The notes below the pieces were generated by a model. It was not told the DNA's origin. It worked only from the letters and a program-made list of their open reading frames with translations, and did not search any database. A DNA stretch of 64,000 nucleotides from Selaginella moellendorffii (lineage: Eukaryota > Plantae > Lycopodiophyta), in assembly GCF_000143415.4 (NCBI RefSeq), contig NW_003314333.1:186001-250000 (forward strand). Reading direction: 5' to 3'. Position numbers and translations under genes: made by a program. Of this stretch, positions 8,179 to 42,726 are shown one piece after another (within the stretch, counting starts at the first letter, position 1; the number at the start of each line of letters is the position of its first letter).

Positions 8179-15653
<7,475 letters not shown>

Positions 15654-28909: not shown

Positions 28910-30994
28910 ATGGCCGGACAAGGTGAGTTCCAGGAGCTGGTGGAGACTCTCATTGGGCTGCTCAACGAGATATCATCCCTGGGGGACTACGCCAGATCGC
29001 ACCGCAAGGAATGCACCAATCTCGCCCGCCGACTCAAGCTCTTGGCCCCGCTGCTGGAGGAGGCGAGGGAGGCCAGCTCGCTTGATTCCCTTCGCCCCTT
29101 CCACGACCTCAAGCTCGTTCTCCACTCGGCCAAGGACCTCCTCTCTCTCTGCCACAAGGGAAGCAAAATTTTCCTGGTAAGCCGCAAAGTTCTCCTTTGA
29201 CTTGCCTGAACTGCGGATGGAAATCTAGATCATGAAAAGAGAAGGAATTGCCAGCAGCTTCCAATCCGTGACCGCGGATTTGGAGCATGTGCTAGATTCC
29301 CTGCCATACAATTCACTGAATCTCTCGGAAGAGGTCCGAGAACAGGTATGTCGACCAAAACCTGTCTTCCTTGGTGAGCTTTCGATGATGATTGTGATCC
29401 ATGCGCAGGTGGAGCTGCTCCATGCGCAGCTCAAGAGGGCCAAAGGCAAAGCAGAAGTTATCGACACGGAGCTGATCGAGGACTTGATGCGATGCAGCAC
29501 GAGTGACGAACGAGACTATGATAGAATGGCAGCGGAGAGACTAGCCGACAAGCTACACCTCAAAACCTGGTCCGAGATAAAGGAGGAGGAGTTTCGTGCG
29601 CAGGAGAGCCTGAAGCTGGACAAAGGTGGTGACCTTGACGCTGCAATCAAGATGGTGCTGGGAAGGCTCAAGGGCATTGCCATCTCGGACGCGGACGAAC
29701 CTTATGTTTCAATCGACAAAGCACGAGTTGACTTCGCTATGAGAAATCCCTTGTCACCGTCACCGCGATCAGACAAGCTGAGCAACCCAGCCATTCCAGA
29801 GGATTTCCGGTGCCCAATCTCGCTGGAACTGATGAAAGACCCCGTCATCGTTGCAACTGGCCAGGTTACGTGCTCTCATCGTGAATTCTTTTATTAATTG
29901 TCGTGATTCCGCAGACTTACGAGCGCTCCTACATCCAAAAGTGGCTAGATGCCGGCCACAAGACATGCCCGATAACGCAGCAGACGCTCCCGCATCTGGT
30001 GCTGACTCCAAACTATGTTCTCCGGAGTCTCATCTGTCAGTGGTGCGAAACCAACGGGATCGAACTGCCAAAGAAAGTTGGCACGAGTCGGGGTGGTCAC
30101 TCGTCCGACTTGGAAGCATGTGGAGACAGGGTGGCCGTAGAGGCGCTACTGCAGAAGCTTTCCAGCCCCCAAGTGGATGTGCAAAGGATAGCTGTGGCGG
30201 ACCTCAGGCTGCTGGCAAAGAGAAGCATCGACAACAGGATTTGCATTGCAGAAGCTGGAGGTGTTCCGCTGCTGATTGGACTCTTGTCATCGACGGACAC
30301 GCGGATACAAGAGCATGCAGTTACCGCTCTGCTCAATCTCTCCATCCACGACCCCAACAAGGCTCAGATCGTCCAGGCAGGTGCTATAAATCCGATTGTC
30401 GAGGTTCTCAAGTCAGGCAGCATGGAGGCAAGAGAGAATGCCGCTGCTACGCTCTTCAGCCTCTCGGTTGTGGACGATAACAAGGTGACGATTGGCCAGA
30501 CGGCTGCGATTCCAGCTCTAGTGAACTTGCTCAGAGAAGGCACTCCCCGAGGCAAAAAGGACGCAGCCACTGCCCTTTTCAACTTGTCCATATACCAAGG
30601 CAACAAGGCCAAGGCAGTGAGAGCTGGCGTGGTTCCGCCGCTGATGGAGCTGCTGGATCCAAACGCAGGCATGGTGGATGAAGCTTTGGCTATTCTGGCA
30701 ATACTCGCAACGCACCAGGAGGGGCGCGTTGCAATCGGCCAGGAGTCAACCATCCCACTTTTGGTGGAGCTCATACGTTCCGGCTCGGCCAGGAACAAGG
30801 AGAATGCAGCTGCTGTTCTCCTTGCTCTGGGCCAGAACGACGCAGCTCATCTTGTCACAGCGCAACAGTACGACGCCGGGGTGCCTTTGGCGGAGCTCGT
30901 GCAAAACGGCACCAGCAGGGCCAGGCGCAAAGCGAGCTTGATCCTGGAGCTGATGCACAAGCAACAGCAAGAACAGTTAAACAAGCAACAATAA
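28910..30994 (+). CDS. U-box/ARM-repeat E3 ubiquitin ligase, PUB13-like (UND-U-box-ARM, about 4 exons)
   Basis: UND ([15 protein letters not shown]); U-box [28 protein letters not shown]...CP; ARM repeats ([37 protein letters not shown]). Confidence 0.95.
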
Positions 30995-32170
30995 CAACGT
31001 AAGACGAAGAAGAGAAGCAGGCAGGACCAAACAACTCAATGTCGTCAACACTTTCTCTACATGCTTGCACACATGGAGGGTGGTGCTCTGTGCTCAAAGT
31101 TGCCCAGGAAGGTCCACCATCAATCAACAACACACGCAGAGCTTGGCGGTTTGTTCATTCACAGTGCTGCTGCGGCTCGGCTCAGAGACAAGATTCAACG
31201 AACGCGAGCTTGGTTTGGATGGAATGTTGCTGAGACATGCGGAGCTCTCGGCTCCTCTTGTTCCAACACAGCCGTGATGACCATGCATTTAGAGGACGCG
31301 GACACCTAATGATTGAAGAGGAACTGCCCTTTTAAGTGATTCACTTTGGCTTCGCTCTTTCACACATGAAGAGGCACAGATACTCCCGACTTCGTTAACA
31401 TCAGGAGCAGCAGAAAGTCCACAATCAAGTAAGAACAATGCTCGTGACTTGGATTGTCCCACTGCCGCAATCGCGGCTGCTTTCTGACTCCTGGAGTTTC
31501 GTTTTCCGTTGGCTCAGGATAAATACTTGTAATCCGTTCCGGAAAACTGCAATGTACGACGAATACGGAGTTACCGTCTTTGTTTGGGACTCCCCAAGCT
31601 CCGTTTCTTCGCACTGTGTTGGAACGGAACTAGAGTTCCGTGGTGCTCGTTTGCTCACGGTGTTTGGGGGACTTGCAACCAAGTCCGCATTTGGCAGCAA
31701 TGCTTCTGGGATGTCGTATCCCAAGTAAGCTGTCGATATGGGTCTGGCACATGCAAATGCCCTCGTCAACCTCACTTGGATACTTACAGCAGCAAATAAC
31801 CTTGGGTGGCAATTGTGTGCCTGTGCTTTCTCCTAGAGAAGCTGCTCCAAAACTAGCGAGATTCTGCTTCTACACGGTCAATTTTGTGGCATGATTGCTC
31901 TCCGTTCTGGTTTTCTTCGAGCTGCCAAGAATCTTTGTGGCTTTGTACGATGGGAGCCTTCATCCTCTTCGGTTCTTGCGTACTTCTCCAGATGAACTTG
32001 CCTGATGAAGACTACATAATATAAATCTGTTGCCGCAGCTTACCTGGAGAGAGCTCAGAAAGAATCGGTATAACACACCTGGAAATTCCATGCGAGGTGG
32101 TGTGAAACAGCTTATAGAGCTGCGAGCAAGATCCAGAGCGACAGTGAAAGCCGCACAATAGTGGGAGCCG

Positions 32171-33683
32171 CTAAGATGGCAGATGGCAGTCTTCTAGATT
32201 AGCGTGGGACGCGATGAGGTCCTCTGTGTAGGCCCATAGCTCTTTGCCCAGCTCCATGTCGCTGGCATACTTGCTGCCTGAGGTTTCCTGGCAGTCTGCA
32301 AAGTATTTTCCGGAAATGCCCTCGACATCTGGGTGTGCCGCCACGTAGCATGTTGTAGCTGCTCCTTGTTCAATCGTCTTCAAGAATGGTTCAATCCACG
32401 AAAATGCCACTGGAACGGGGCAAAGATCAGAATCAATCCAGATGGAATATTCAGGTAAGCTTTCTCACAGCCTGCTGGTTCAGCAAATTTCTCAACGAAG
32501 CTGCTGTTGAATACTCCAGGGTGCAACGCGTTCACGGAGATGTTCACTCCTTGCTCCTGGAGAACGTTCAGACCAGAGGAGCAAAAACAAAGTAAACAGG
32601 ACCAACCTCGAGTCTACGTGCCAGTTCCTTGGCAAACAATATGTTGGCAAGTTTGGTCTGTGCATAAACCGTGGACAGTCCATGAATGCTGCAAATTCAT
32701 TGTAATGTGTAAGTTTTCTTTATAACCATACCATACTATACCTCTGCAAAACAGGGACTGCGAACATCCAACTTTTTCTGTGAAGATTCTTAAAATTAAT
32801 TCCCCGAGCACTCTCGTGTTGGCTGGAAGCAACAACGACAATTCTGCCTCGGTTGCCGGATTGCGTTGCAGTCTCCTCTATCAAGTCGAGCAGTGAGTGA
32901 GTGAGAACGAAATGGCCAACGTGATTCACTGCAAATGTCATCTCCAGGCCATCCTCTGACAGGACGAACTGGCTTGAAGCGATTCCTGCATTGTTACTTC
33001 AGACATAACTTTGTCAACCATGAGCTTTAATTTGTGTGTATGAAGATACTTACATGAGTATGTGAAGTGGCAGGCCCAGAGCTTTGAACTTAGCCACGAA
33101 GTTTCGCACAGAGTACATCGACCCGAGATTGAGATGGAGCACGGTGACCTGTGCATTGGGTGTTTGCTCCAAAATCTTGAGTTTTGCTGCGTGTGCAGCC
33201 TTAAGGTTCTCGGAGGCAATGACGACATGAGCACCTCTTCTTGCGAGCACTCTAGATGTTTCGAATCCAATCCCAGCGCTACCGCCTGTACATGGAGGAA
33301 AGGTATGGTGTCGATGCCGAAACCGATCAATTCCCAGACCTGTGATGAGAACAACTTTGGAATCAAGGGAGATGCCATCCATGACTTCCTCTGCAGTCGA
33401 TTTCGCGCGGCTCCTTGGGCTCTGTTCAACCTTGGGGGAGACAAGGCTCTGGAGCTCCTCTGTATAGCATTCATTCATTTTGCTGTTCGACCATACCCAT
33501 GAATCTAGAACAGCACAACTGCTTACTCAGTGATCCGAGAAGGGCCTCTTGAGGCGGAGCTGCCCGTGCCACAACCTTGGATCTCGCACGTTTGCTGCAT
33601 TTCCTGCTACTTCTGGGCTTCGCTGTTGGTGCAGCTGATGCAACTGGTAACTGGAGCTGGAGTGATGCAAAACGGGTTGCCAT
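32171..33683 (-). CDS. Plastid-targeted short-chain dehydrogenase/reductase, TIC32/RDH12-like
   Basis: Transit peptide (MATRFASLQLQLPV...VVARA); STAEEV, TGGSAGIG, NNAG, FAVNHVGHF, YAQTKLANILF, LHPG, QGAATTCYVA; exons join in frame. Confidence 0.9.
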
Positions 33684-34135
33684 TTGTTCCAATACGCCAC
33701 AGACTCCTACATGGTAACTCCTTAGCACACTCACCATTCATTAGTAACGGGACCACTGGTCCGTGGGTGGCTGGGAGGGATGGGTCACCTTGTCCTTTTG
33801 TTTTTCACGTGAATGAAGGAATTCAAGGGCTGTTAGGGACTGCAGATCTTGGGAGATCGCCATCATGACAATGTTTTCGTGCCTTATGGCGTATATCTGG
33901 CCATTTACCTCGGTGGAACGGAGGAGAGCTTCAAGTTCAAGGAGTGTAATACATTCTAAACACCATGTATCATTATTTTATTCGCTCTGAGCCAAAAGCA
34001 TCCTCGCTGTCTTGCTACATTCTGCCGTTCTTTGCTCGCCTTGCTGTCTGATAGCGTGGCAAGTTAGGATGTAGGGTTATGTTACGTAGGAGACACTTCG
34101 TAGAACAATTCTAAACACAGAGAGGAGAATAATGA

Positions 34136-34969
34136 CTAGTTAGAACTATTAGCTAGAGCTCTCTCTCCTTCGAACAATCTCTTGTGGACTTTAGCAAACA
34201 AAGATGGCTGCGGAGTGCAACTGTTGTCAGTCGTCTTGAAGTTGTCAAAATCCAAGCCGACTTTAGCAGCAGCAAGCCGCAGCTCGGGGACAATGGACTT
34301 GGGGAGGCTTGAACTCCGTGTGTAGACAACAGCCCCACCATAGCCGTCCCATGCATCGTTGGACCCGGTGTAGTACACGAAAATGTAGTCGTCCGGTTGC
34401 TTGTTGAGCCGCGCGGAGACGATGAACCTGCGCAAGAGCCCCCAATCAATCCATTAATTGCTCATGAAGGATTCGCAGCTATGCTGGCAATCGCGCACCG
34501 GACCCACGCACACGGAAGCTTTCCTTATAAGATTCATGGCGGTTGTTGGACGTTTGCTCACCAATCTTCTCTGTAATTGAGGTACTCGTTGTCATGATTG
34601 GAGAGGACTCCCGGGCGTTTGGGATTCTTCTGCACAAAATTTTGTGTTGCGTCGCGTGTGATGAAGCCGCCGTCGGGGGTGGTCACCCTCCACGTCAATT
34701 TTCCGGTGAGCTTGTTGGGGCTGGCCGAGAACTCATGGACTTGGCAATCGTAGAGATCGAACAAGGGATTGAGACCGCTGGTAATATACCATGTGCCTGT
34801 GAAGTCTTGGGTGTTGAACTTTTCCACCAAAGCGCAGTCTGGTACCGGGTAGGTGCCGTCGTTGGCACTTTGAGGGATGCACTTTTTTTTGCTCAGGAGG
34901 CATGTGTTGAATTCCTCTACGACCTTGTTCTGGAAAATGTCTCCACATCTGACCTATATTCGGAAACAA

Positions 34970-35004
<35 letters not shown>

Positions 35005-35514
35005 CAGAAACAGAGTGAAAAACTTGATCCCAGAAAGTCTATAAAATCAAATAATACTTGGCACTTCAAGTCTCCTGGACTGCAAGTTTCCAGACAAACT
35101 AAATTGGCAGCGCATGAAGGATCTCCCACGCATCGAACCAGCTCAGATCTGAAGAACATGCGATCAGCTGGATTCACAAGAAACAACGAATCCCAACAAA
35201 TGAGGAGGTGGAGCACAACAGCACCTGCATCCACCCAAAAGACATTTCCATGTTTTTTGAGCGGTCTCGATGTCCAGAGCCACAGCTTGGTTTGCTGGGT
35301 GCAAGAGCAAACACGTTCCCAGGATCAAGCCCCATGCATTTACTTTGAATCCCGGCCCGGTACTTCTTGTTGCTACATTCTCCACTCTTCGGATTCGTAC
35401 AAGCCGGTGCGGAGCCGTGGTACTGGCAATCTGCTCCTTCTTTACCTGCACGCCATAGAACATCTTGCAACTCTTCTCCTTCAAGGCCCATCCTACGGCC
35501 TTGCAGTGATACAT
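34136..35514 (-). CDS. VDE: Violaxanthin de-epoxidase-like lipocalin, atypical (no Glu-rich tail); start 35514 or 35463
   Basis: Bipartite lumenal-type presequence ending AVA; Cys-rich domain (CLLGGCRSELVRC...[11 protein letters not shown]); lipocalin [44 protein letters not shown]. Confidence 0.9.
34972..35000. repeat. (GA)n microsatellite in a VDE intron
   Basis: Direct read of the GAGAGA run. Confidence 0.9.
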
Positions 35515-35845
35515 TTCAAGAAGCCTCCAAACAAACAAGGGACTGATCGTGAAACACCCGAGGTGGGGGGGCGTCGACACTGATCTTCCCCCTTCTGTAG
35601 GCAGCTCGAACCATGTCCTTTTTCTCAACATGTTGCTTTTGTGGGCCTTCTCAATCTGAGGCCTGGGACATTCCACGCCGCCAAGATTCCAGGCAAAAAC
35701 GCACGTTTCTAGAATTGACACACACAGCTTGGAGGACGCGTGGGATGCCGTTACTTTTACGGAAAAGAAAACGAAATCCTATTGCGCTTGACACGTAATT
35801 GCGCCAGCTTACTGCTCCACCTACCGGCAACGAGTGTGTCAAAAG

Positions 35846-36325
35846 TCCCAAGGACAAACCGTACGGAACGCCGTAAAAAAGATATCTTCTGGAAGTATGG
35901 CACATCGGCCAGTGGAAACCTTTGGTGCACCAGGCCGTCTTGAACAAACATATAGGCCATGCTAAAGATGGTGATGCCCAGGCCCTGCAATTCGAAACTA
36001 CATCCTATTACTTACTGCTCAAAAGCACAAACCAGGAAGGAGTCCGTGGTGGGAGAATTCGCAAGACATGAGAGCTATAGCGGGGACTGCGTTCATTGAG
36101 CTCGAATGGACCTTGGCGATGAGACTGTTGTAGAGAGGCTTGTGGTAATTAACTGTTGGAAATTTGTGTGTGCGTTACCTTGTGCATGCTCGACAAGCAA
36201 GAGTGCCATGGCGCTTTGTGTACCCATCTAGCCCAAAACTCCATACCGAGAAATAGCACAGTTGCACCTAATGCGAAAGACACCGTGCCAAGGATTTCCA
36301 GAGCAGGCAGTTCACTGCTGCCTTT
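35846..36325 (-). pseudogene. BCH: Beta-carotene 3-hydroxylase (non-heme di-iron, BCH/CHY-b) pseudogene, 5'-truncated
   Basis: Manual translation: LGMEFWARWVHKAPWHSCLSSMHK | SHRQGPFELN(frameshift)NAVPAIALMSCEFSHHGLLPGLCF*A | GLGITIFSMAYMFVQDGLVHQRFPLADVPYFQKI...FYGVPYGLSLG; TGA at 36019-36021; His boxes deleted or mutated; introns retained. Confidence 0.9.
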
Positions 36326-36399
36326 CTGGACATAGTTAAAGATTTCTCTTTTGTGATCAAGTCTATGTGTGTCAAAAACATATTATGGCATGCCAAGAA

Positions 36400-39300
36400 G
36401 TACTGAGGTGGGTAGTGTGGCAACAAATTTTATTATACTGCAAAATATATGAAATTAAAACATATGTGTGCTTCAAGTGTTTAGCAAAATAATCTTTTGG
36501 TTGCCACTTTTTTTTCAAAGGCACATTGATTCACGGCCACACATGAATTCTTAATTCACATCAATTTACTTACCACATTATCATCTTCTTCAGAATGGCA
36601 GGAATGCATGATGAGATGATTTGGAAGCACAACTAAACCATACATTGTAGATGCTATCCCCAAAAGACTGTTGGCCATGAGTCTTCACATTCCACATGAC
36701 TGTTGTATATTGTTGGTTGCATTAATTTGGCGCCATGTTAGACCACTTGATTAGGGCTACTGACATTGTAGAGGGCATTGAGCATGCACTCATGGCTACA
36801 TGCATCTGGGTTGATTTAGAGTCTGGCCAATCTCTACCTTAGAATAGGCAAGAATTGCAAATGTCATATGTATTGTGACATGGCACTCAAGCTCTTCACC
36901 AAGAATGAAGTTTGATAAAGAATGGAATCCCATGGAAGAAGCAGACATTGGCTATTGGATGAGACTATTAATGGATTGATAGAGATTGTGCACACTGGAT
37001 GAGCCAGAGTGTGATATCCTGCTGTATTGGGTAGTGTGCTGGACACAACTAAGCATCTTGGGTAGCAGAGTGTTGTGACCACAATCAAGGCACAAATAGA
37101 GATTCTTCTATGTTCTTGTTTCCAAGTTCCATAAATCATCAAATCACTTGTAAAAAAGTAGAAGACATGGTTTCACATGTGGCATGAAGTACATGAAGTA
37201 TCTGTTTATGTGGTATATCCCATTCAAATATTACAATGGATGATTCATGATTGTGTGTATAATATTTTTATGTGCACCTGAAAACAAAATAGTATATTAG
37301 CACCTATGTAAATAAAAGATGCACCCTTGTGAAATCCCACCACTAAAATGCCACCAACTCGCTTACCATTATGATATCTTGTCCCCGTGCTTTTGGTGAC
37401 CAGGGCATAGAGAGGGTTTGTTCTTGAAATATGAACAAGCTTTAGAACTAAATTTATAAGAAAGTGGCCCCTCAAGTTTGGTATATTTGCAAATATACAT
37501 CTTGAAGGTTTGAAATGCAATTCTGAAGTTTAAGAGCATTTCAAAAAAATATTCTAATTTAACCTAGAAAAAATTACCCACTAAATAGATCTTATTAAGC
37601 TTATTTCAGGTAAAGTATGATTCAATTGATGATTTATGAACAACAATGAAAAATGTAGCTATTATTGGGCATTTTGAGTTGATCTTGATTTGATTAGAGA
37701 GGAAATTACTCTAAATGATATAAAGTCAAAGGATTAGGTAACTACATTTTTGGAAGGGTAACAATTTGAACATTTGATAAGTAATATTTTTGAGTGTTTG
37801 AATGTGTGGTTATCTAGAGCTTGAGACATGTCTATCCTTGAAATGCTTCAATGCATTTTGTGCAAACTAGCTAGGTTTTCTAGCATCAATTAAAAGGTGA
37901 TGAGGTATATGGTAAGAGTGGAAAGGCACAACTAAAGTTAATCGACAATGCATAAAAACTTCTTTATGATGCAATTTTATGAGTTTGCTATTATATTTCA
38001 GATCCTATTATATTTGAAATACATATACAAAGCTATACTTGTGTGGTAAGCATACTAATATAGTTTTGCGTATGCTTTGGATAGCAAAAAATATGATTGA
38101 TTTATGGTTATGCAATTTGGTATTAAATAAGTTTTGAGTCTGTCTCTATTAATTGGTTAAGGGAATTATACCACATATTGAGATTAACATTTAGTAATCC
38201 AATTTAGTCAGTGTGGTTGATTATAAACAACCAAAGAGAACGAGTAGAAAATAATCCATAAATATTCAAATATAGATGGAAAAGGCTTATAAACAAAAAT
38301 GCACTTTATTTTCTAATTGGTTAATGGTTTTGGGATATTTACCTACACAACACTCATAACTATATAATATCATTAGAAAGGTGATCAATAAAATGATTGA
38401 GATATACTAAGAAAGTACTACACATCATTTATAAACTTCAACATAAAGAACTTTAGTTATAAAATTTTCATACATCATGAATATGCTTCTTTTATATCCC
38501 CTTTAGATCAAAATATTATCAATAAAATCAGTAGTCACTTTTGACATATCACAAAGAACTATATATTAGAAAATCACCAAAGTATCATTCAACCTAAACA
38601 TTATAAAAAATTTGCACAAACCAAATAATATATAAAAAGTAGTTTTAGGATATCCTCTTCATCCATTGACACTTGCTAGTACCCAAAGGTGATATTGAAA
38701 CATATGAAATCAATTGTCACTTTTGGCATATCGTAAAGAACCTCATTTATTATATATTGGCAAGTCATCAAAGCATCATTTAACCTAAATGACATCACTA
38801 AAAACTCATATAAACCAAATGATACATGGAAATAGTCTTAGAGATATCCTCTTCAACTATAGCACTTATTAGTACCCAAGATCTAATTAATGGCTTCATC
38901 CCAAATGAACAAACTCCGAGAGGGAAAGACAAGAGAGAGATACTCAAGGTCTCGATTTTAGTCTTGATTCTTTTAATTTCCTCTCGAACAAATGCAGCAA
39001 GTAGGAGATTTGTAGTATGCATACACATTTGGCATTGTCATAATATTCAATAGGTAATAGTTGATGCAAGATGCTTCTGTCATCACCAGATGAAGTTCAT
39101 ATACTTAGGGACTTCAATACTTTTGGATAATACCCTTTTCCAATAATTTTTTTGACATTGACTCATAAGATTTTAATCTCATTTGATGATTGAAACTAAA
39201 TAAATTTTTTGATTAAGCATCCTTAGTTACAATAAAATGATACATTGCAATCTTAGCCCTAGAAAATAAGTCAAATTTAAAGAGATTAATATACTCCTTC

Positions 39301-41250
39301 AATTGATTAATTGTTATCTCACCAAGATCATCAAAAGGATTTGAAGAGGAAATAAAAAATCTTGAAGGAAAAATGGAAGGAAATACAAAAATAATTGAAA
39401 TAAAAGTAAAACAATGGGATGGAGTGGAATAAAAGCAAAAGGAATGGAAAAAATATAAATAAGTATGAGATAAGAGGAAAGCCTCATAATTACACTTGGC
39501 ATGATTGTATTTCAATTAATCTATATTAATAATAAAGTTAAAAGCTTGACTTAGCACCACTTACAAAGATTGATCCTTAAACTTGTGATTACCCATGCAC
39601 ACAATCAAGTTAATAGCTATTGCCATAGAGAATGAAGGTTAGCTTTATTATATGATATAAATGCACATGACAACATTTGGCAATAAATTGTCAAAAATAA
39701 ATTTAAAACTATCAGTAAATATGGAAAGGATAACAAAGGACCTTCTATTATATAGCAAATTTAAAAAATAAACACTAAGTGAATTGGTGCCAAATGAAGC
39801 CTTTGATGATACTTTTAAAAGTGTCATTGACATATTCACACAAGAACCCTTTACTACTTGCATAACATTTAATTTCCTGAAAGAACTTTTATATCAAGGC
39901 CTTCTATTACAATAACATTAACATGATGTTATTGAAACTAAGATTTCCACCCAAGAAATGAAAAAAGTCAATCCAAAAAACGTTGATAATGCTAATATAT
40001 ATGGCCAACTCAATAATGAATGTCATGACCTTGTTTACATCTTTGTCCTCATCCTTGAATATGAGTAGAAATAACAACAACCTTTAGCAAAACAAAATCA
40101 TCCCTCACAAAATGTAAAGGTAGAGTATGTGTAATTACAAGTGGGTGAGGTAATGTTTTATAACATTATATCAGCTAAAGAATATAGTCCAAGGTTACTG
40201 AAACACAAGTGTATGTATAAACCCCACAAGATTTTGACAAAGCATTAGCCATAATATGCCTAACTTGATTTACTTTTATATATTGAACTCCTCATAAAGT
40301 AAAAAACTCTAGAAGAAAATACTAATTAACTCAAATAGCCTTTGATGGAGAGAATGTAATTGTTAGAATGCATCATTATAATCATCAACATGTTTAAATA
40401 CAAAATTGAAATATTTAAAAGAAAGTTATAACTTATATAAATAGGTTCACTCAAACTATTATACATACTATTATAATGCCATCCTTTGAAAATAATTGGG
40501 AAAGTTGAATATATACCCAACATTATCACATAAATAATAAATGGTAATCATTGTGATGTGATTAAACCAATAGTACACATCATCTCTCGGATTCCCACAA
40601 AATAAATATAGTTGGACATGAAGATTGGTAAAGGAAACTAAACTAAATGTTGTGAACACCACCATCAATTGTTCAATTGCATTTACATAACATTAAAAAA
40701 TTGCATTAATTGTTGCAAGGCAGGAACAGCCAGCTACTGCCCAAGGCAATTGCCCATCCATGGATGGCAAAGAAAAGGAAAAGGAAAAATGTTCATTAAT
40801 GGCAAACCATGCAAGAAAGATGGACTTAAACAAATAACTTATGGCTATATAAAAAAGAGTATGTAGCCTTGTGCCATTTAGAATATTTCTAGTATCTAGT
40901 GATCTTTACATCAACAATGATAAAACTAAATCAAGCAAAAAAAGCACAAATGCAAGCACTCCTTAGGGACTTAAAGCTGTCTACTGTATAGATTACATAT
41001 ATTTGTACTCACATATAACTTTAGTTTATATACAATGAATGATCCAGATTGAATCCAATCCACTATGCTAGTAATAATATATAGCATCATAGACCTTTCA
41101 AATATTATAAACCAAATATTGCTGTATAGTACAAGGAATTATTATAGAATTGAAATAGAAATTTTAAAATTTAAAGTTTGAAAGTGCACCTTTAAAATGT
41201 CAATGTGAATAGTATTCTGCTAGAAGGATTTCTCCTACTATAAGAGCTTG
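36400..41250. mobile_element. AT-rich, strongly CpG-depleted decayed TE-like block, family unassigned
   Basis: Sharp drop in GC, no long ORFs, internal duplication (38535-38689 versus 38717-38882). Confidence 0.45.
38535..38882. repeat. Diverged tandem duplication, ~160 bp
   Basis: Both units start GTCACTTTTG.CATATC and end GATATCCTCTTCA...TAGTACCCAA. Confidence 0.8.
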
Positions 41251-42726
41251 TGCTGGAACTTGGTCAACTTCCCTTCGTCATGATCAAACTCCAGCGGAGT
41301 AGCAGTGGCAAAGTAGGAAAATTTTGGATCGAGAGAGGATGAGCTTGGACCACTGCAAGTTCAGCTTGAGGTTGGCATAGTAGGCCATGGAGCAGGATGG
41401 ATTGTTGAGTGCTCAATTGTGCATTGACAGGCTTACCTTTGTGAACAGTGCCTGGATTGTTCTTGGAGTATTAAAAGAACAAATCTATAAATTTGATTAG
41501 AACACAATAAAAAGCCTCATTAAAGCTGACAAATACATATCTACATGAAACATTGCATAATGGCTGAATGCATAAATTTGTGTTTTCTAACTTATTAGAA
41601 ATCTCTTATCAAGATCTTGGTATGGTCTTTGGACCACCATGGTTCTCCTCGAGCAGCTTGAGGCTGGCCTGTGTATGATGCTCTTGAGGTCCTGGCAATC
41701 ACCAATATGGTTTCCTGCCGCGAGCTCCTGGACCCCTCCTGAATCATGCATGATCCATCGTCCAGAAGTTATATGTCATGGGATTAGTCATTGATGCTCA
41801 TATAATGGTAGGGTCCATCCAATGAACAATTGCCACGGACATGTCAGTAGCTTGTAGAACTCCCACAAAAACTAGAAAGTAACAGTTGCTGCTGAAGTCT
41901 GCCACAACTTGAAACAATTACTGCTTTTGCAAGTACCCAAAAACACATCACTGGAGACAAATACCCAATCTTGGAAAATGCTGCAATGCAAGCAATCCTT
42001 CCATGTACAAGCTTCTGGTGGTTGCCAAGCAGAGAAATAGCCCGAAAATGTCTCAAGCTGTGCTCCCCCATGAAAAACTAAATTAAACAAAAGTCAGGAA
42101 ACAACACCAATGAGAAACCAGAGTAGAGAGGTGGCTTGGCTGTCTAGAAAGTTGCAGCAGGCTCCCAGCACCCAAATGAGCCTCAGAAATTAGTGCATTC
42201 TCATCTTCCAGGTGGATGTGGAGCATCACTAGCTGGCAAGCATGCGTCGCTTTGCTGCTTATAGCGAATGCCCTCGTGAGGTATTTGTTATAGACTAGGT
42301 AGTGCGGCTTTGGAGACCCGAGCATGCTCTATTGACGAGCTCTCCCATGTTGAGGCGCTAGTAGCAATTGCCGCACATGCACCTCTCTTAATACCCGAAA
42401 GACACACAAAAGCTACAAAACAATGCCTCATGAACATAAGGAGACGAAGGCACAGAATTGTAGCTCAGGGGATGCTGGGGACTTAACCCACTGAGCAACA
42501 TTTGCCCTGTTGCAATCTCATAAGCATACAACTCCTTTGTCACACAACACTCTTACAAGATAACGGGCAAGATACAGAGTGGGGAAGCATAACCTCCACA
42601 GGGTTGTTGCTTGGACCCATACCACTCCATGGGAGGAACGCCACTGATATGCCATCGAGGTATCAGGCCCAGCCTACACCCGCTTGTGCTCTACTGCCTG
42701 GTACGCGTCTTGCGGTGTATGACGAA

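What the first reader, a model, noticed from the sequence alone, without database searches (positions are those of the whole stretch)
32171..36325. Candidate specialised xanthophyll module: BCH pseudogene, atypical VDE and plastid SDR in tandem
Seen: three adjacent minus-strand loci within ~4.2 kb, gaps under 0.5 kb: a beta-carotene hydroxylase relic, an intact but atypical VDE, and an intact plastid TIC32/RDH12-type SDR with an altered cofactor site. Known: BCH and VDE both produce zeaxanthin, and plant carotenoid genes are normally unlinked. Some Selaginella species redden with the retro-ketocarotenoid rhodoxanthin; a BCH variant has been reported to make rhodoxanthin in honeysuckle; VDE-like paralogs in algae catalyse non-de-epoxidase xanthophyll rearrangements; a vertebrate SDR (BDH1L) oxidises 3-hydroxy-carotenoids. 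Inference: the VDE paralog could open epoxides toward retro-carotenoids (eschscholtzxanthin type) and the SDR oxidise 3-OH to 3-keto, forming an undescribed clustered pathway whose BCH member has decayed here.
Basis: partly seen in the sequence, partly recalled or inferred. Interest (0 to 1): 0.85.

Follow-up and report, generated by a model that had tools for sequence, protein, structure and literature searches.

The report
Tail-less VDE paralog beside dead BCH
In the spikemoss Selaginella moellendorffii this locus is one of four copies of a lineage-specific gene pair (a carotene hydroxylase followed by a violaxanthin de-epoxidase lacking its acidic tail); here the hydroxylase is dead, the de-epoxidase is intact and transcribed, and the neighbouring dehydrogenase is just a neighbour.

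Summary
The window is S. moellendorffii scaffold GL377637.1. It carries, on the minus strand, a beta-carotene hydroxylase (BCH) pseudogene, an intact spliced VDE without the Glu-rich C-terminal domain, and an intact SDR.

- The BCH-VDE pair is real and recurrent. The genome has four paralogous loci, each on two haplotypes, with a diverged BCH ("BCH-S") directly upstream of the tail-less VDE ("VDE-S").
- BCH-S is intact at two loci and decayed at two, including this one. VDE-S is intact at all four, with dN/dS about 0.2.
- A canonical VDE and a canonical BCH also exist, both on this scaffold and neither beside the other.
- The SDR adjoins VDE-S only at this locus, so it is not part of the unit.
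- With true splicing the SDR has TGGSAGIG, NNAG and YxxxK. Its only oddity is Glu where protochlorophyllide reductase has the NADPH-site Arg.
- BCH-S lacks the three residues that make honeysuckle BCH a rhodoxanthin synthase.
- VDE-S keeps the ten Cys, Y198 and W179. The window copy alone has D177E, as algal VDL/VDR do.

The scan had already noted the BCH-VDE pairs on other scaffolds. I rate this a new variant of a known kind, of moderate interest.

The parts
35800..36376 (-). BCH-S pseudogene (5'-truncated relic of a beta-carotene hydroxylase paralog). It lacks exon 1, has a frameshifting 17-nt deletion, an in-frame TGA at 36021-36019, His box 3 H>Q at 35942-35940, and His box 4 deleted.
   Evidence: blastn to intact BCH-S at L003/L004 gives 76-77% identity. 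Five-locus DNA alignment. Weak Pfam FA_hydroxylase hit. tblastn with canonical SmBCH P0415.
36125..36178 (-). Intron of the BCH relic that is still spliced in rare transcripts.
   Evidence: a CT..AC joint in run X1 (contig depth 9). A second low-depth contig in X8 covers 35807-35989.
34136..35514 (-). VDE-S coding region (locus A copy; XP_002986217.2 / P0264). Exons are 35514-35225, 35148-35058, 34953-34562 and 34427-34136. It encodes a bipartite transit peptide, a Cys-rich domain and a lipocalin domain, with no Glu-rich tail.
   Evidence: Splice joints in 4 runs. Spliced ORF. Pfam VDE. PDB 3cqn E 2.6e-73. Identity to P0264.
34567..34569 (-). GAA codon giving Glu at the position of catalytic Asp177 (Arabidopsis mature numbering). 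It is Asp in 106 of 106 canonical VDEs and in VDE-S at loci B, B' and C.
   Evidence: The role of D177 is taken from PMC13181403.
33772..34135 (-). VDE-S 3' UTR, running to within a few tens of bases of the SDR 5' end.
   Evidence: Contigs X8 record 16 and X1 record 1.
32171..33737 (-). SDR gene of the TIC32/RDH/POR-like classical SDR type, 408 aa from the ATG at 33737 (an alternative ATG lies at 33683). Exons are 33737-33527, 33459-33339, 33284-33054, 32996-32742, 32688-32606, 32555-32469 and 32409-32171. Motifs: TGGSAGIG, NNAG, YAQTK. Glu replaces the Arg at the end of beta2 (IASEN).
   Evidence: Six joints in all 4 runs. ORF. Pfam adh_short. Alignment to POR structures. Annotated 408-aa product.
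36377..42000 (.). AT-rich, ORF-poor repeat-laden stretch that replaces the 5' part of the BCH relic. It is not homologous to the upstream flanks of the other BCH-VDE loci.
   Evidence: Composition. blastn. ORF list.

Best explanation
The locus is one degenerate copy (locus A) of a Selaginella-lineage tandem unit: a diverged beta-carotene hydroxylase (BCH-S) immediately followed, on the same strand, by a diverged violaxanthin de-epoxidase without the Glu-rich C-terminal domain (VDE-S). DNA-level duplication copied the unit, introns included, to four loci.

Shown:
- At locus A only about 2.3 kb is shared with the other loci, running from BCH intron 1 to just past the VDE stop.
- The BCH part is a non-functional, barely transcribed relic in both haplotypes.
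- VDE-S is intact, correctly spliced, transcribed from both haplotypes and under purifying selection.
- The SDR downstream is an ordinary neighbouring gene, found next to VDE-S only at this locus.

Inferred mechanism:
- VDE-S enters the thylakoid lumen through its S/T-rich plus hydrophobic/AxA presequence.
- It folds with the five N-terminal disulfides and binds an epoxy-xanthophyll in the lipocalin barrel, using W179 and Y198 with ascorbate.
- It then de-epoxidises or otherwise rearranges the xanthophyll.
- Because it lacks the acidic tail, its membrane association and pH gating should differ from canonical VDE and be closer to the tail-less algal VDLs.
- The window copy, with Glu at position 177, may have altered kinetics or substrate use.
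For: - Identity of the window: 100% over 13 kb to GL377637.1.
- Paralogous BCH-VDE loci and their alleles.
- Extent of shared DNA.
- Relic lesions shared with allele L006.
- All seven VDE-S mature ORFs are intact.
- dN/dS is 0.19-0.27 between loci, with dS 0.15-0.20.
- The locus-A stem has 10 synonymous against 6 nonsynonymous fixed changes, giving omega about 0.17.
- Spliced RNA contigs come from four runs, and their variant letters match the other haplotype.
- VDE-S forms one clade with 100% support and a stem of 0.74 substitutions per site, against 0.21 for canonical SmVDE.
- Ten Cys, Y198, W179, D98, D117, H121, H168 and D206 are retained. The tail is absent, while all 106 canonical VDEs have it.
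- No SDR homolog lies at the other loci.
- The review states that VDLs lack the tail and that VDL/VDR carry D177E (PMC13181403).
Against: - No enzymatic or localisation data exist.
- D177, called essential in the review, is Glu in this copy, so this particular protein could be weakly active or do something else.
- About 40 otherwise near-invariant positions in the Cys-rich and lipocalin domains are changed in all VDE-S copies, so 'de-epoxidase' is an extrapolation.
- Contig depth cannot rank expression.
- A prior of about 2 x 40 / 22,000 for a random neighbour being a carotenoid gene (my estimate) argues that the BCH-VDE adjacency is not pure chance. The explanation is deliberately silent on whether linkage is selected.
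Confidence: 0.68

Rival explanations
1. BCH-S and VDE-S form a selected, co-regulated two-gene xanthophyll module. BCH-S hydroxylates beta-carotene and tail-less VDE-S de-epoxidises violaxanthin. Together they raise zeaxanthin (or make a lineage-specific xanthophyll) independently of the canonical, pH-gated cycle. Locus A is a copy that has lost one member.
For: - Both members are fast-evolving lineage-specific paralogs of enzymes that yield the same product, while canonical copies sit elsewhere.
- They are tandem and same-strand, with an intergenic gap of about 140-430 bp, at all four loci.
- Both are under purifying selection.
- Chance adjacency of two pathway genes is a priori rare.
Against: - The four loci descend from one ancestral adjacency, so recurrence counts as one event, not four.
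- BCH-S decayed at two of four loci, and a premature-stop allele exists at a third, while VDE-S persisted. Cis-linkage is therefore dispensable.
- Co-expression was not tested.
- No ortholog pair was found outside S. moellendorffii.
Confidence: 0.22
2. One reading: VDE-like, SDR and formerly BCH form a three-gene retro-ketocarotenoid (rhodoxanthin or eschscholtzxanthin type) pathway.
For: - The three genes are adjacent with short gaps, and the VDE 3' UTR abuts the SDR 5' end.
- The SDR has a plastid-like N-terminal extension and an unusual Glu at the NADP-site Arg position.
- A variant BCH can make rhodoxanthin (PMC7176425).
Against: - The SDR is absent from the other three BCH-VDE loci.
- BCH-S has A72/F102/A103, not T/I/P.
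- The BCH here is dead in both haplotypes.
- No literature links S. moellendorffii to rhodoxanthin.
Confidence: 0.03
3. The window copy of VDE-S, with Glu177 and no tail, works like an algal VDL. It would be an epoxy-xanthophyll isomerase or tautomerase, for example forming neoxanthin-type allenes, rather than a de-epoxidase.
For: D177E and the absence of the Glu-rich tail are the two features the review gives for VDL. Both are present here. The E177 lineage is under purifying selection.
Against: - VDE-S nests among land-plant VDEs, not with the heterokont-algal VDEs used as outgroup. No VDL sequences were included in either tree.
- The three sister loci keep D177.
- D to E is conservative and could be neutral.
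Confidence: 0.1
4. VDE-S is a non-catalytic, lumenal carotenoid-binding lipocalin, or a decaying duplicate.
For: Many conserved positions are changed, the stem branch is long, and the tail is lost. The ratio between the two locus-A alleles is 0.84, although it rests on very few substitutions.
Against: Catalytic Y198, W179 and all ten Cys are retained. All seven copies keep intact ORFs and omega is about 0.2. The gene is spliced and transcribed.
Confidence: 0.08

Closest known systems
Plant violaxanthin de-epoxidase (NPQ1 / VDE; PDB 3cqn, 3cqr lipocalin domain)
   Same: VDE-S has a Cys-rich N-terminal domain with all 10 conserved Cys and a PF07137 lipocalin domain (about 60% identity). Y198, W179 and the pH-sensing D98, D117, H168 and D206 are kept. 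It has a bipartite presequence and is placed within land-plant VDEs.
   Different: VDE-S has no Glu-rich C-terminal domain (about 70 residues missing) and a 2-residue deletion plus charge loss in the NNRPDETEC loop. About 40 near-invariant positions are changed, and the stem branch is about 3.5 times longer than that of the canonical SmVDE. The window copy carries D177E. The family is multi-copy and sits next to a BCH paralog.
Algal VDE-like proteins (VDL1/VDL2)
   Same: Both lack or have a reduced acidic tail, both have Glu at position 177 (window copy only for VDE-S), and both retain the Cys-rich domain and Y198.
   Different: VDE-S is a recent land-plant offshoot of VDE and not a member of the VDL clade. 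Its three paralogous loci keep Asp177.
Non-heme di-iron beta-carotene 3-hydroxylase (BCH / CrtR-b) and its variant LHRS (rhodoxanthin synthase)
   Same: The intact BCH-S copies (266 aa, 7 exons) keep all four His boxes and 104 of 113 conserved columns. The relic in the window derives from them.
   Different: The window copy is a pseudogene. BCH-S has HKSHH instead of HESHH and a few other changes, but A72/F102/A103 are BCH-type rather than the LHRS T/I/P.
TIC32 / RDH11-14 / DHRSX / POR branch of classical SDRs
   Same: The SDR has TGxxxGIG, NNAG and YxxxK. The best solved relatives are protochlorophyllide oxidoreductases (E 3e-13 on the N-terminal third).
   Different: Glu replaces the Arg that follows strand beta2 in POR (IASEN against MACRN). 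From general SDR knowledge this predicts loss of NADPH preference. The SDR also has an N-terminal extension of about 80 aa. Its substrate is unknown.
Plant biosynthetic gene clusters
   Same: Two non-homologous enzymes that both yield zeaxanthin lie in tandem, and both are lineage-specific paralogs of primary-pathway genes.
   Different: There are only two genes. Co-expression is untested. The recurrence comes from duplication of a single ancestral adjacency, and one partner is repeatedly lost.

Membership tests
Plant VDE (NPQ1 type) | Lipocalin domain PF07137 | tested here: met
   (172 and 83 bits on two exons). (3cqn E 2.6e-73).
Plant VDE (NPQ1 type) | Ten conserved Cys in the N-terminal domain (C9, 14, 21, 27, 33, 37, 46, 50, 65, 72) | tested here: met
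   The alignment shows all ten present. Only the non-conserved C7 is Trp. The Cys list comes from PMC13181403.
Plant VDE (NPQ1 type) | Catalytic Asp177 and Tyr198 | tested here: not met
   Y198 is present. Position 177 is Glu in the window copy and its allele, while it is Asp in 106 of 106 canonical VDEs and in VDE-S loci B, B' and C.
Plant VDE (NPQ1 type) | Glu-rich C-terminal domain of about 100 aa | tested here: not met
   The ORF stops about 17 residues after the lipocalin domain, and RNA shows no further splice. All other land-plant VDEs inspected end in ...EKLFG..P.RKLR.
Plant VDE (NPQ1 type) | Ascorbate-dependent de-epoxidation of violaxanthin at acidic pH | not testable with these tools
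   Needs an enzyme assay.
Algal VDL | Membership of the VDL clade | not tested
   VDE-S groups inside non-seed land-plant VDEs with 100% support. The outgroups were heterokont VDEs. No VDL sequences were included, so clade exclusion rests on nesting within land-plant VDE.
BCH (di-iron beta-carotene hydroxylase) | Four His boxes and an intact ORF | tested here: not met
   The window relic has a frameshift, a TGA, H>Q in box 3 and box 4 deleted. The features are met in the paralogs L004, L007 and L008.
LHRS-type rhodoxanthin synthase | T72, I102 and P103 in place of A, F and A | tested here: not met
   BCH-S reads ...RWAHKALWH... and ...NDVFAIVN.... The determinants are taken from PMC7176425.
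Classical SDR | TGxxxGxG, NNAG, catalytic YxxxK | tested here: met
   The spliced ORF has TGGSAGIG, INNAGI and YAQTK. Pfam adh_short.
NADPH-dependent TIC32/POR-type SDR | Basic residue after beta2 that binds the 2'-phosphate | tested here: not met
   query IASEN aligns to POR MACRN. The role of the Arg comes from general SDR knowledge and was not tested here.
Plant biosynthetic gene cluster (three genes, as proposed) | The same gene set linked in paralogous or orthologous loci | tested here: not met
   The SDR is absent at loci B, B' and C. The BCH-VDE pair alone is conserved among the paralogous loci.
Plant biosynthetic gene cluster (three genes, as proposed) | Co-expression of members | not tested
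   Read laying returned contigs only, which cannot rank expression.

The most novel reading that the evidence does not exclude
Selaginella evolved a dedicated two-gene xanthophyll unit: a BCH paralog together with a tail-less, lumenal VDE paralog, amplified to four loci. This unit would supply zeaxanthin, or a lineage-specific xanthophyll, outside the classical pH-gated cycle. The Glu177 copy in this window would be a further specialisation towards VDL-like chemistry. If true, it would be the first carotenoid gene cluster in a land plant and a natural experiment on the function of the VDE C-terminal domain.
Probability: 0.2. Interest if true: 0.75.

Novelty: new variant of a known kind. Interest (0 to 1): 0.55.

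Why it matters
A 2026 review of VDE (PMC13181403) lists two open questions: what the N- and C-terminal domains do, and whether VDEs of different lineages differ functionally. This locus bears on both.

Here a land plant keeps a canonical VDE alongside a multi-copy, transcribed, selectively constrained VDE family that has naturally lost the acidic tail. One member also carries the D177E change typical of algal VDL/VDR. That gives ready-made natural variants for testing pH gating, membrane binding and substrate range.

The tandem arrangement with a BCH paralog is a rare case of physical linkage between two xanthophyll genes in a plant. I found no description of either feature in the searchable literature. 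Subscription journals were not covered.

Tried and rejected
- Reading the SDR Gly motif as altered was rejected, because the apparent change is an intron.
- A further VDE exon encoding the tail was rejected. No joint leaves the last exon, and contigs run contiguously through the 3' UTR.
- A brute-force intron search for the BCH-S model gave too many solutions. It was replaced by anchor-based exon definition, which reproduces the annotated 266 aa.
- Searching PDB with a 75-aa SDR exon found nothing. The 142-aa read-through piece worked.
- The Atlas search of an SDR exon gave only generic SDR and DHRSX-like clusters.
- Looking up the genomic place of canonical BCH P0415 and of Diphasiastrum VDE P0003 failed. 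The longer Diphasiastrum isoform showed no BCH or SDR within the locus.
- No long direct or inverted repeats bound the AT-rich stretch upstream of the relic.
- Accession order (EFJ numbers) does not follow position along the scaffold, so it could not place P0415.
- Full-length BCH and SDR homolog searches were not possible. Spliced proteins have no reference, and I did not type long sequences. The BCH search therefore saw only proteins of 78-246 aa.
Full report
**Identity of the window.** The 13 kb around the finding is 100% identical to Selaginella moellendorffii v1 scaffold GL377637.1, about 210-232 kb (locus L002). The gene order there is NPH3 ... [7.7 kb without called genes] ... VDE (393-aa model) - SDR (408 aa) - U-box/ARM (opposite strand) - PPR genes. 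The other haplotype (GL377630.1, L006) has the same order.

**Gene models from RNA.** Contigs of four public runs (studies P1, P2, P3 and P5), all from the coded 'organism A', were laid on 31800-36700.
- They remove six GT-AG introns from the SDR: 32410-32468, 32556-32605, 32689-32741, 32997-33053, 33285-33338 and 33460-33526.
- They remove three introns from the VDE. Written with canonical ends these are 34428-34561, 34954-35057 and 35149-35224.
- They remove one intron from the BCH relic (36125-36178). This joint appears only in run X1, at contig depth 9. X8 has a separate unspliced contig at depth 4 over 35807-35989.
- Variant letters in the VDE contigs match the allelic haplotype L006 at 11 of 11 positions, so both alleles are transcribed.
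- The tool warns that contig depth cannot rank genes, so I claim only presence and splicing.

**The SDR.**
- Spliced, it encodes 408 aa, which equals the annotated length.
- It carries TGGSAGIG, INNAGI and YAQTK, a complete classical SDR signature. The Gly motif looks disrupted only if the 54-nt intron is read through.
- The closest solved relatives of its N-terminal third are protochlorophyllide oxidoreductases (E 3e-13). There the query's ...HVVIASENL... aligns with ...HVIMACRNL....
- Glu therefore replaces the Arg that, from general SDR knowledge, contacts the NADPH 2'-phosphate.
- tblastn with the SDR finds nothing within 10 kb of VDE-S at loci B, B' and C (including the allelic loci of B and C), nor around the canonical VDE locus. 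Their downstream neighbours are A_deamin and RCC1 genes or nothing. The SDR is a neighbour peculiar to this locus.

**The VDE.**
- The first ATG inside the transcribed region is at 35514.
- The product has an S/T-rich stretch, a hydrophobic segment ending in A-V-A, the Cys-rich domain and the lipocalin domain. It stops at ...[12 protein letters not shown].
- Every other land-plant VDE inspected, including the lycophyte Diphasiastrum and ferns, continues for about 70 more residues to ...EKLFG..P.RKLR.
- S. moellendorffii also has such a canonical VDE (P0007, 438 aa, and allele P0273) about 620 kb away on the same scaffold, between a pyridoxal decarboxylase gene and a BRX gene.
- The window protein is 58% identical to that canonical VDE and 88% identical to a cluster of ten S. 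moellendorffii entries.

**Four loci.** Fetching those entries' loci shows four sites per haploid genome, each represented on two scaffolds or haplotypes where found:
- A is the window, with allele L006.
- B is L003, with allele L007.
- B' is L005, on the same scaffold as B and 176 kb from it.
- C is L004, with allele L008.

All seven VDE-S copies have intact mature ORFs with the same intron positions and no tail.
- Between loci, dN/dS is 0.19-0.27 and dS is 0.10-0.20. Alleles differ by dS 0.01-0.05.
- On the branch leading to locus A there are 10 synonymous and 6 nonsynonymous fixed changes, giving omega about 0.17.

**Placement and residues of VDE-S.**
- On the Cys-rich plus lipocalin columns, VDE-S is one clade with 100% support inside the non-seed land-plant VDEs. 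Its stem is 0.74 substitutions per site, against 0.21 for the canonical Selaginella VDE.
- A Selaginella-specific duplication is not rejected (AU p = 0.26).
- Against 106 canonical VDEs, 188 columns are at least 93% conserved. VDE-S differs at 58 of them in all copies, and about 19 of those lie in the missing tail.
- Retained: the ten conserved Cys, W179, Y198, D98, D117, H121, H168 and D206. The roles of these residues are taken from PMC13181403.
- Changed in all copies: Y180F, F116Y, K102T, and the NNRPDETEC loop, which is shortened by two residues and has lost its acidic residues.
- Asp177 is invariant in the 106 canonical VDEs and is called essential in the review. It is kept at loci B, B' and C but is Glu in the window copy and its allele (YREDW and YKEDW).
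- The same review notes that VDL and VDR carry Glu at this position. It also notes that VDLs lack the acidic tail, and it suggests the tail may keep VDE off the membrane at neutral pH.

**The BCH relic and its relatives.**
- At loci C (both haplotypes) and B (haplotype L007), a 266-aa, seven-exon BCH lies directly upstream of VDE-S on the same strand. All four His boxes are present.
- Haplotype L003 of locus B has a premature stop at codon 50.
- Locus B' has lost exons 1-2 and His box 4.
- The window and its allele lack exon 1. They share a frameshifting 17-nt deletion, a TGA and the H>Q change, and they have lost His box 4.
- The window shares only about 2.3 kb with the other loci, from BCH intron 1 to just past the VDE stop. 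B and B' share about 10 kb. B and C also share the downstream genes.
- The relic is therefore the upstream flank that travelled with VDE-S. Either it was truncated at duplication, or the AT-rich repeats now upstream truncated it later.

**Canonical BCH and BCH-S.**
- A separate canonical BCH exists on this scaffold (P0415, EFJ12773.1). It lies in none of the fetched loci.
- BCH-S is its sister in the tree (SH-aLRT 88), on a longer stem of 0.99 against 0.28.
- BCH-S changes only 9 of 113 conserved columns. It is under purifying selection, with omega about 0.2 between B and C.
- At the three positions that convert a BCH into the honeysuckle rhodoxanthin synthase (T72, I102, P103; PMC7176425), BCH-S has the ordinary A, F and A.

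**Reading.**
- The specific model fails. The SDR is not part of the repeated unit, the BCH-S sequence gives no hint of retro-carotenoid chemistry, and the BCH here is dead.
- Whether the BCH-S/VDE-S adjacency is selected remains open. All four pairs descend from one ancestral adjacency. BCH-S has been lost repeatedly while VDE-S persisted, which argues that cis-linkage is not required.
- On the other hand, two lineage-specific, fast-evolving paralogs that both yield zeaxanthin sitting side by side is unlikely a priori.
- I commit to VDE-S being a lumenal epoxy-xanthophyll enzyme whose regulation by pH and membrane binding differs from VDE because the tail is gone. The Glu177 copy in this window is a possible further functional variant.

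**Prior notes and literature.**
- The scan had already flagged BCH-VDE pairs on other scaffolds (s1-375051, s1-420019, s1-385098) and this VDE itself (s1-399011). Those notes gave me the lead, which I then checked directly.
- I found no paper describing the VDE-S family or the pair.

**Limits.**
- No plant-genome collection was available for cross-species synteny.
- Homolog searches saw no VDE-S-like protein of intermediate identity outside S. moellendorffii, but coverage of other Selaginella species in the database is unknown.
- The BCH search was restricted to proteins of 78-246 aa.

Noticed in passing
L001:4596-5359 (GL377637.1, about 5 kb upstream of the canonical VDE): A partial duplicate of the canonical VDE N-terminal exons (77-84% aa identity to P0007 residues 40-207) lies between two BURP genes.
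   Followed up: no
L003:8618-8620 versus L007: Haplotype-specific premature stop (CAA>TAA, codon 50) in the BCH-S of locus B. The other haplotype encodes an intact 266-aa protein.
   Followed up: partly
P0277, P0392, P0400 N-termini (L003, L004, L008 about 10000-10450): The transit-peptide region of VDE-S at loci B and C contains two or three tandem copies of an S/T-rich unit of about 37 aa (MFASTTTPHRLVRRVATTSTGPNVKS.KLLCGKK.E.). The window copy has one.
   Followed up: no
window 36400-42000: AT-rich (28-37% GC), ORF-poor stretch. The part at 39090-40284 is a dispersed repeat that is also found near loci B and C (about 64% identity), and 38522-38879 holds a diverged tandem duplication.
   Followed up: partly
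window 31800-32170 and 29903-30994: RNA contigs of the SDR run on for more than 2.9 kb past its stop, towards the convergent U-box/ARM gene. The 3' ends of the two genes probably overlap.
   Followed up: no
window 34399-34589: Contigs in two runs retain VDE-S intron 3. In run X2 that contig carries the other haplotype's letters at 34453 and 34455; the X5 contig does not. This could be intron retention or contaminating DNA.
   Followed up: no
window 33527-34428: One contig (run X1) is continuous from the last VDE-S exon through the intergenic DNA into the spliced SDR. This means either read-through or overlapping UTRs. The tool warns that such a contig does not show a single transcript.
   Followed up: no
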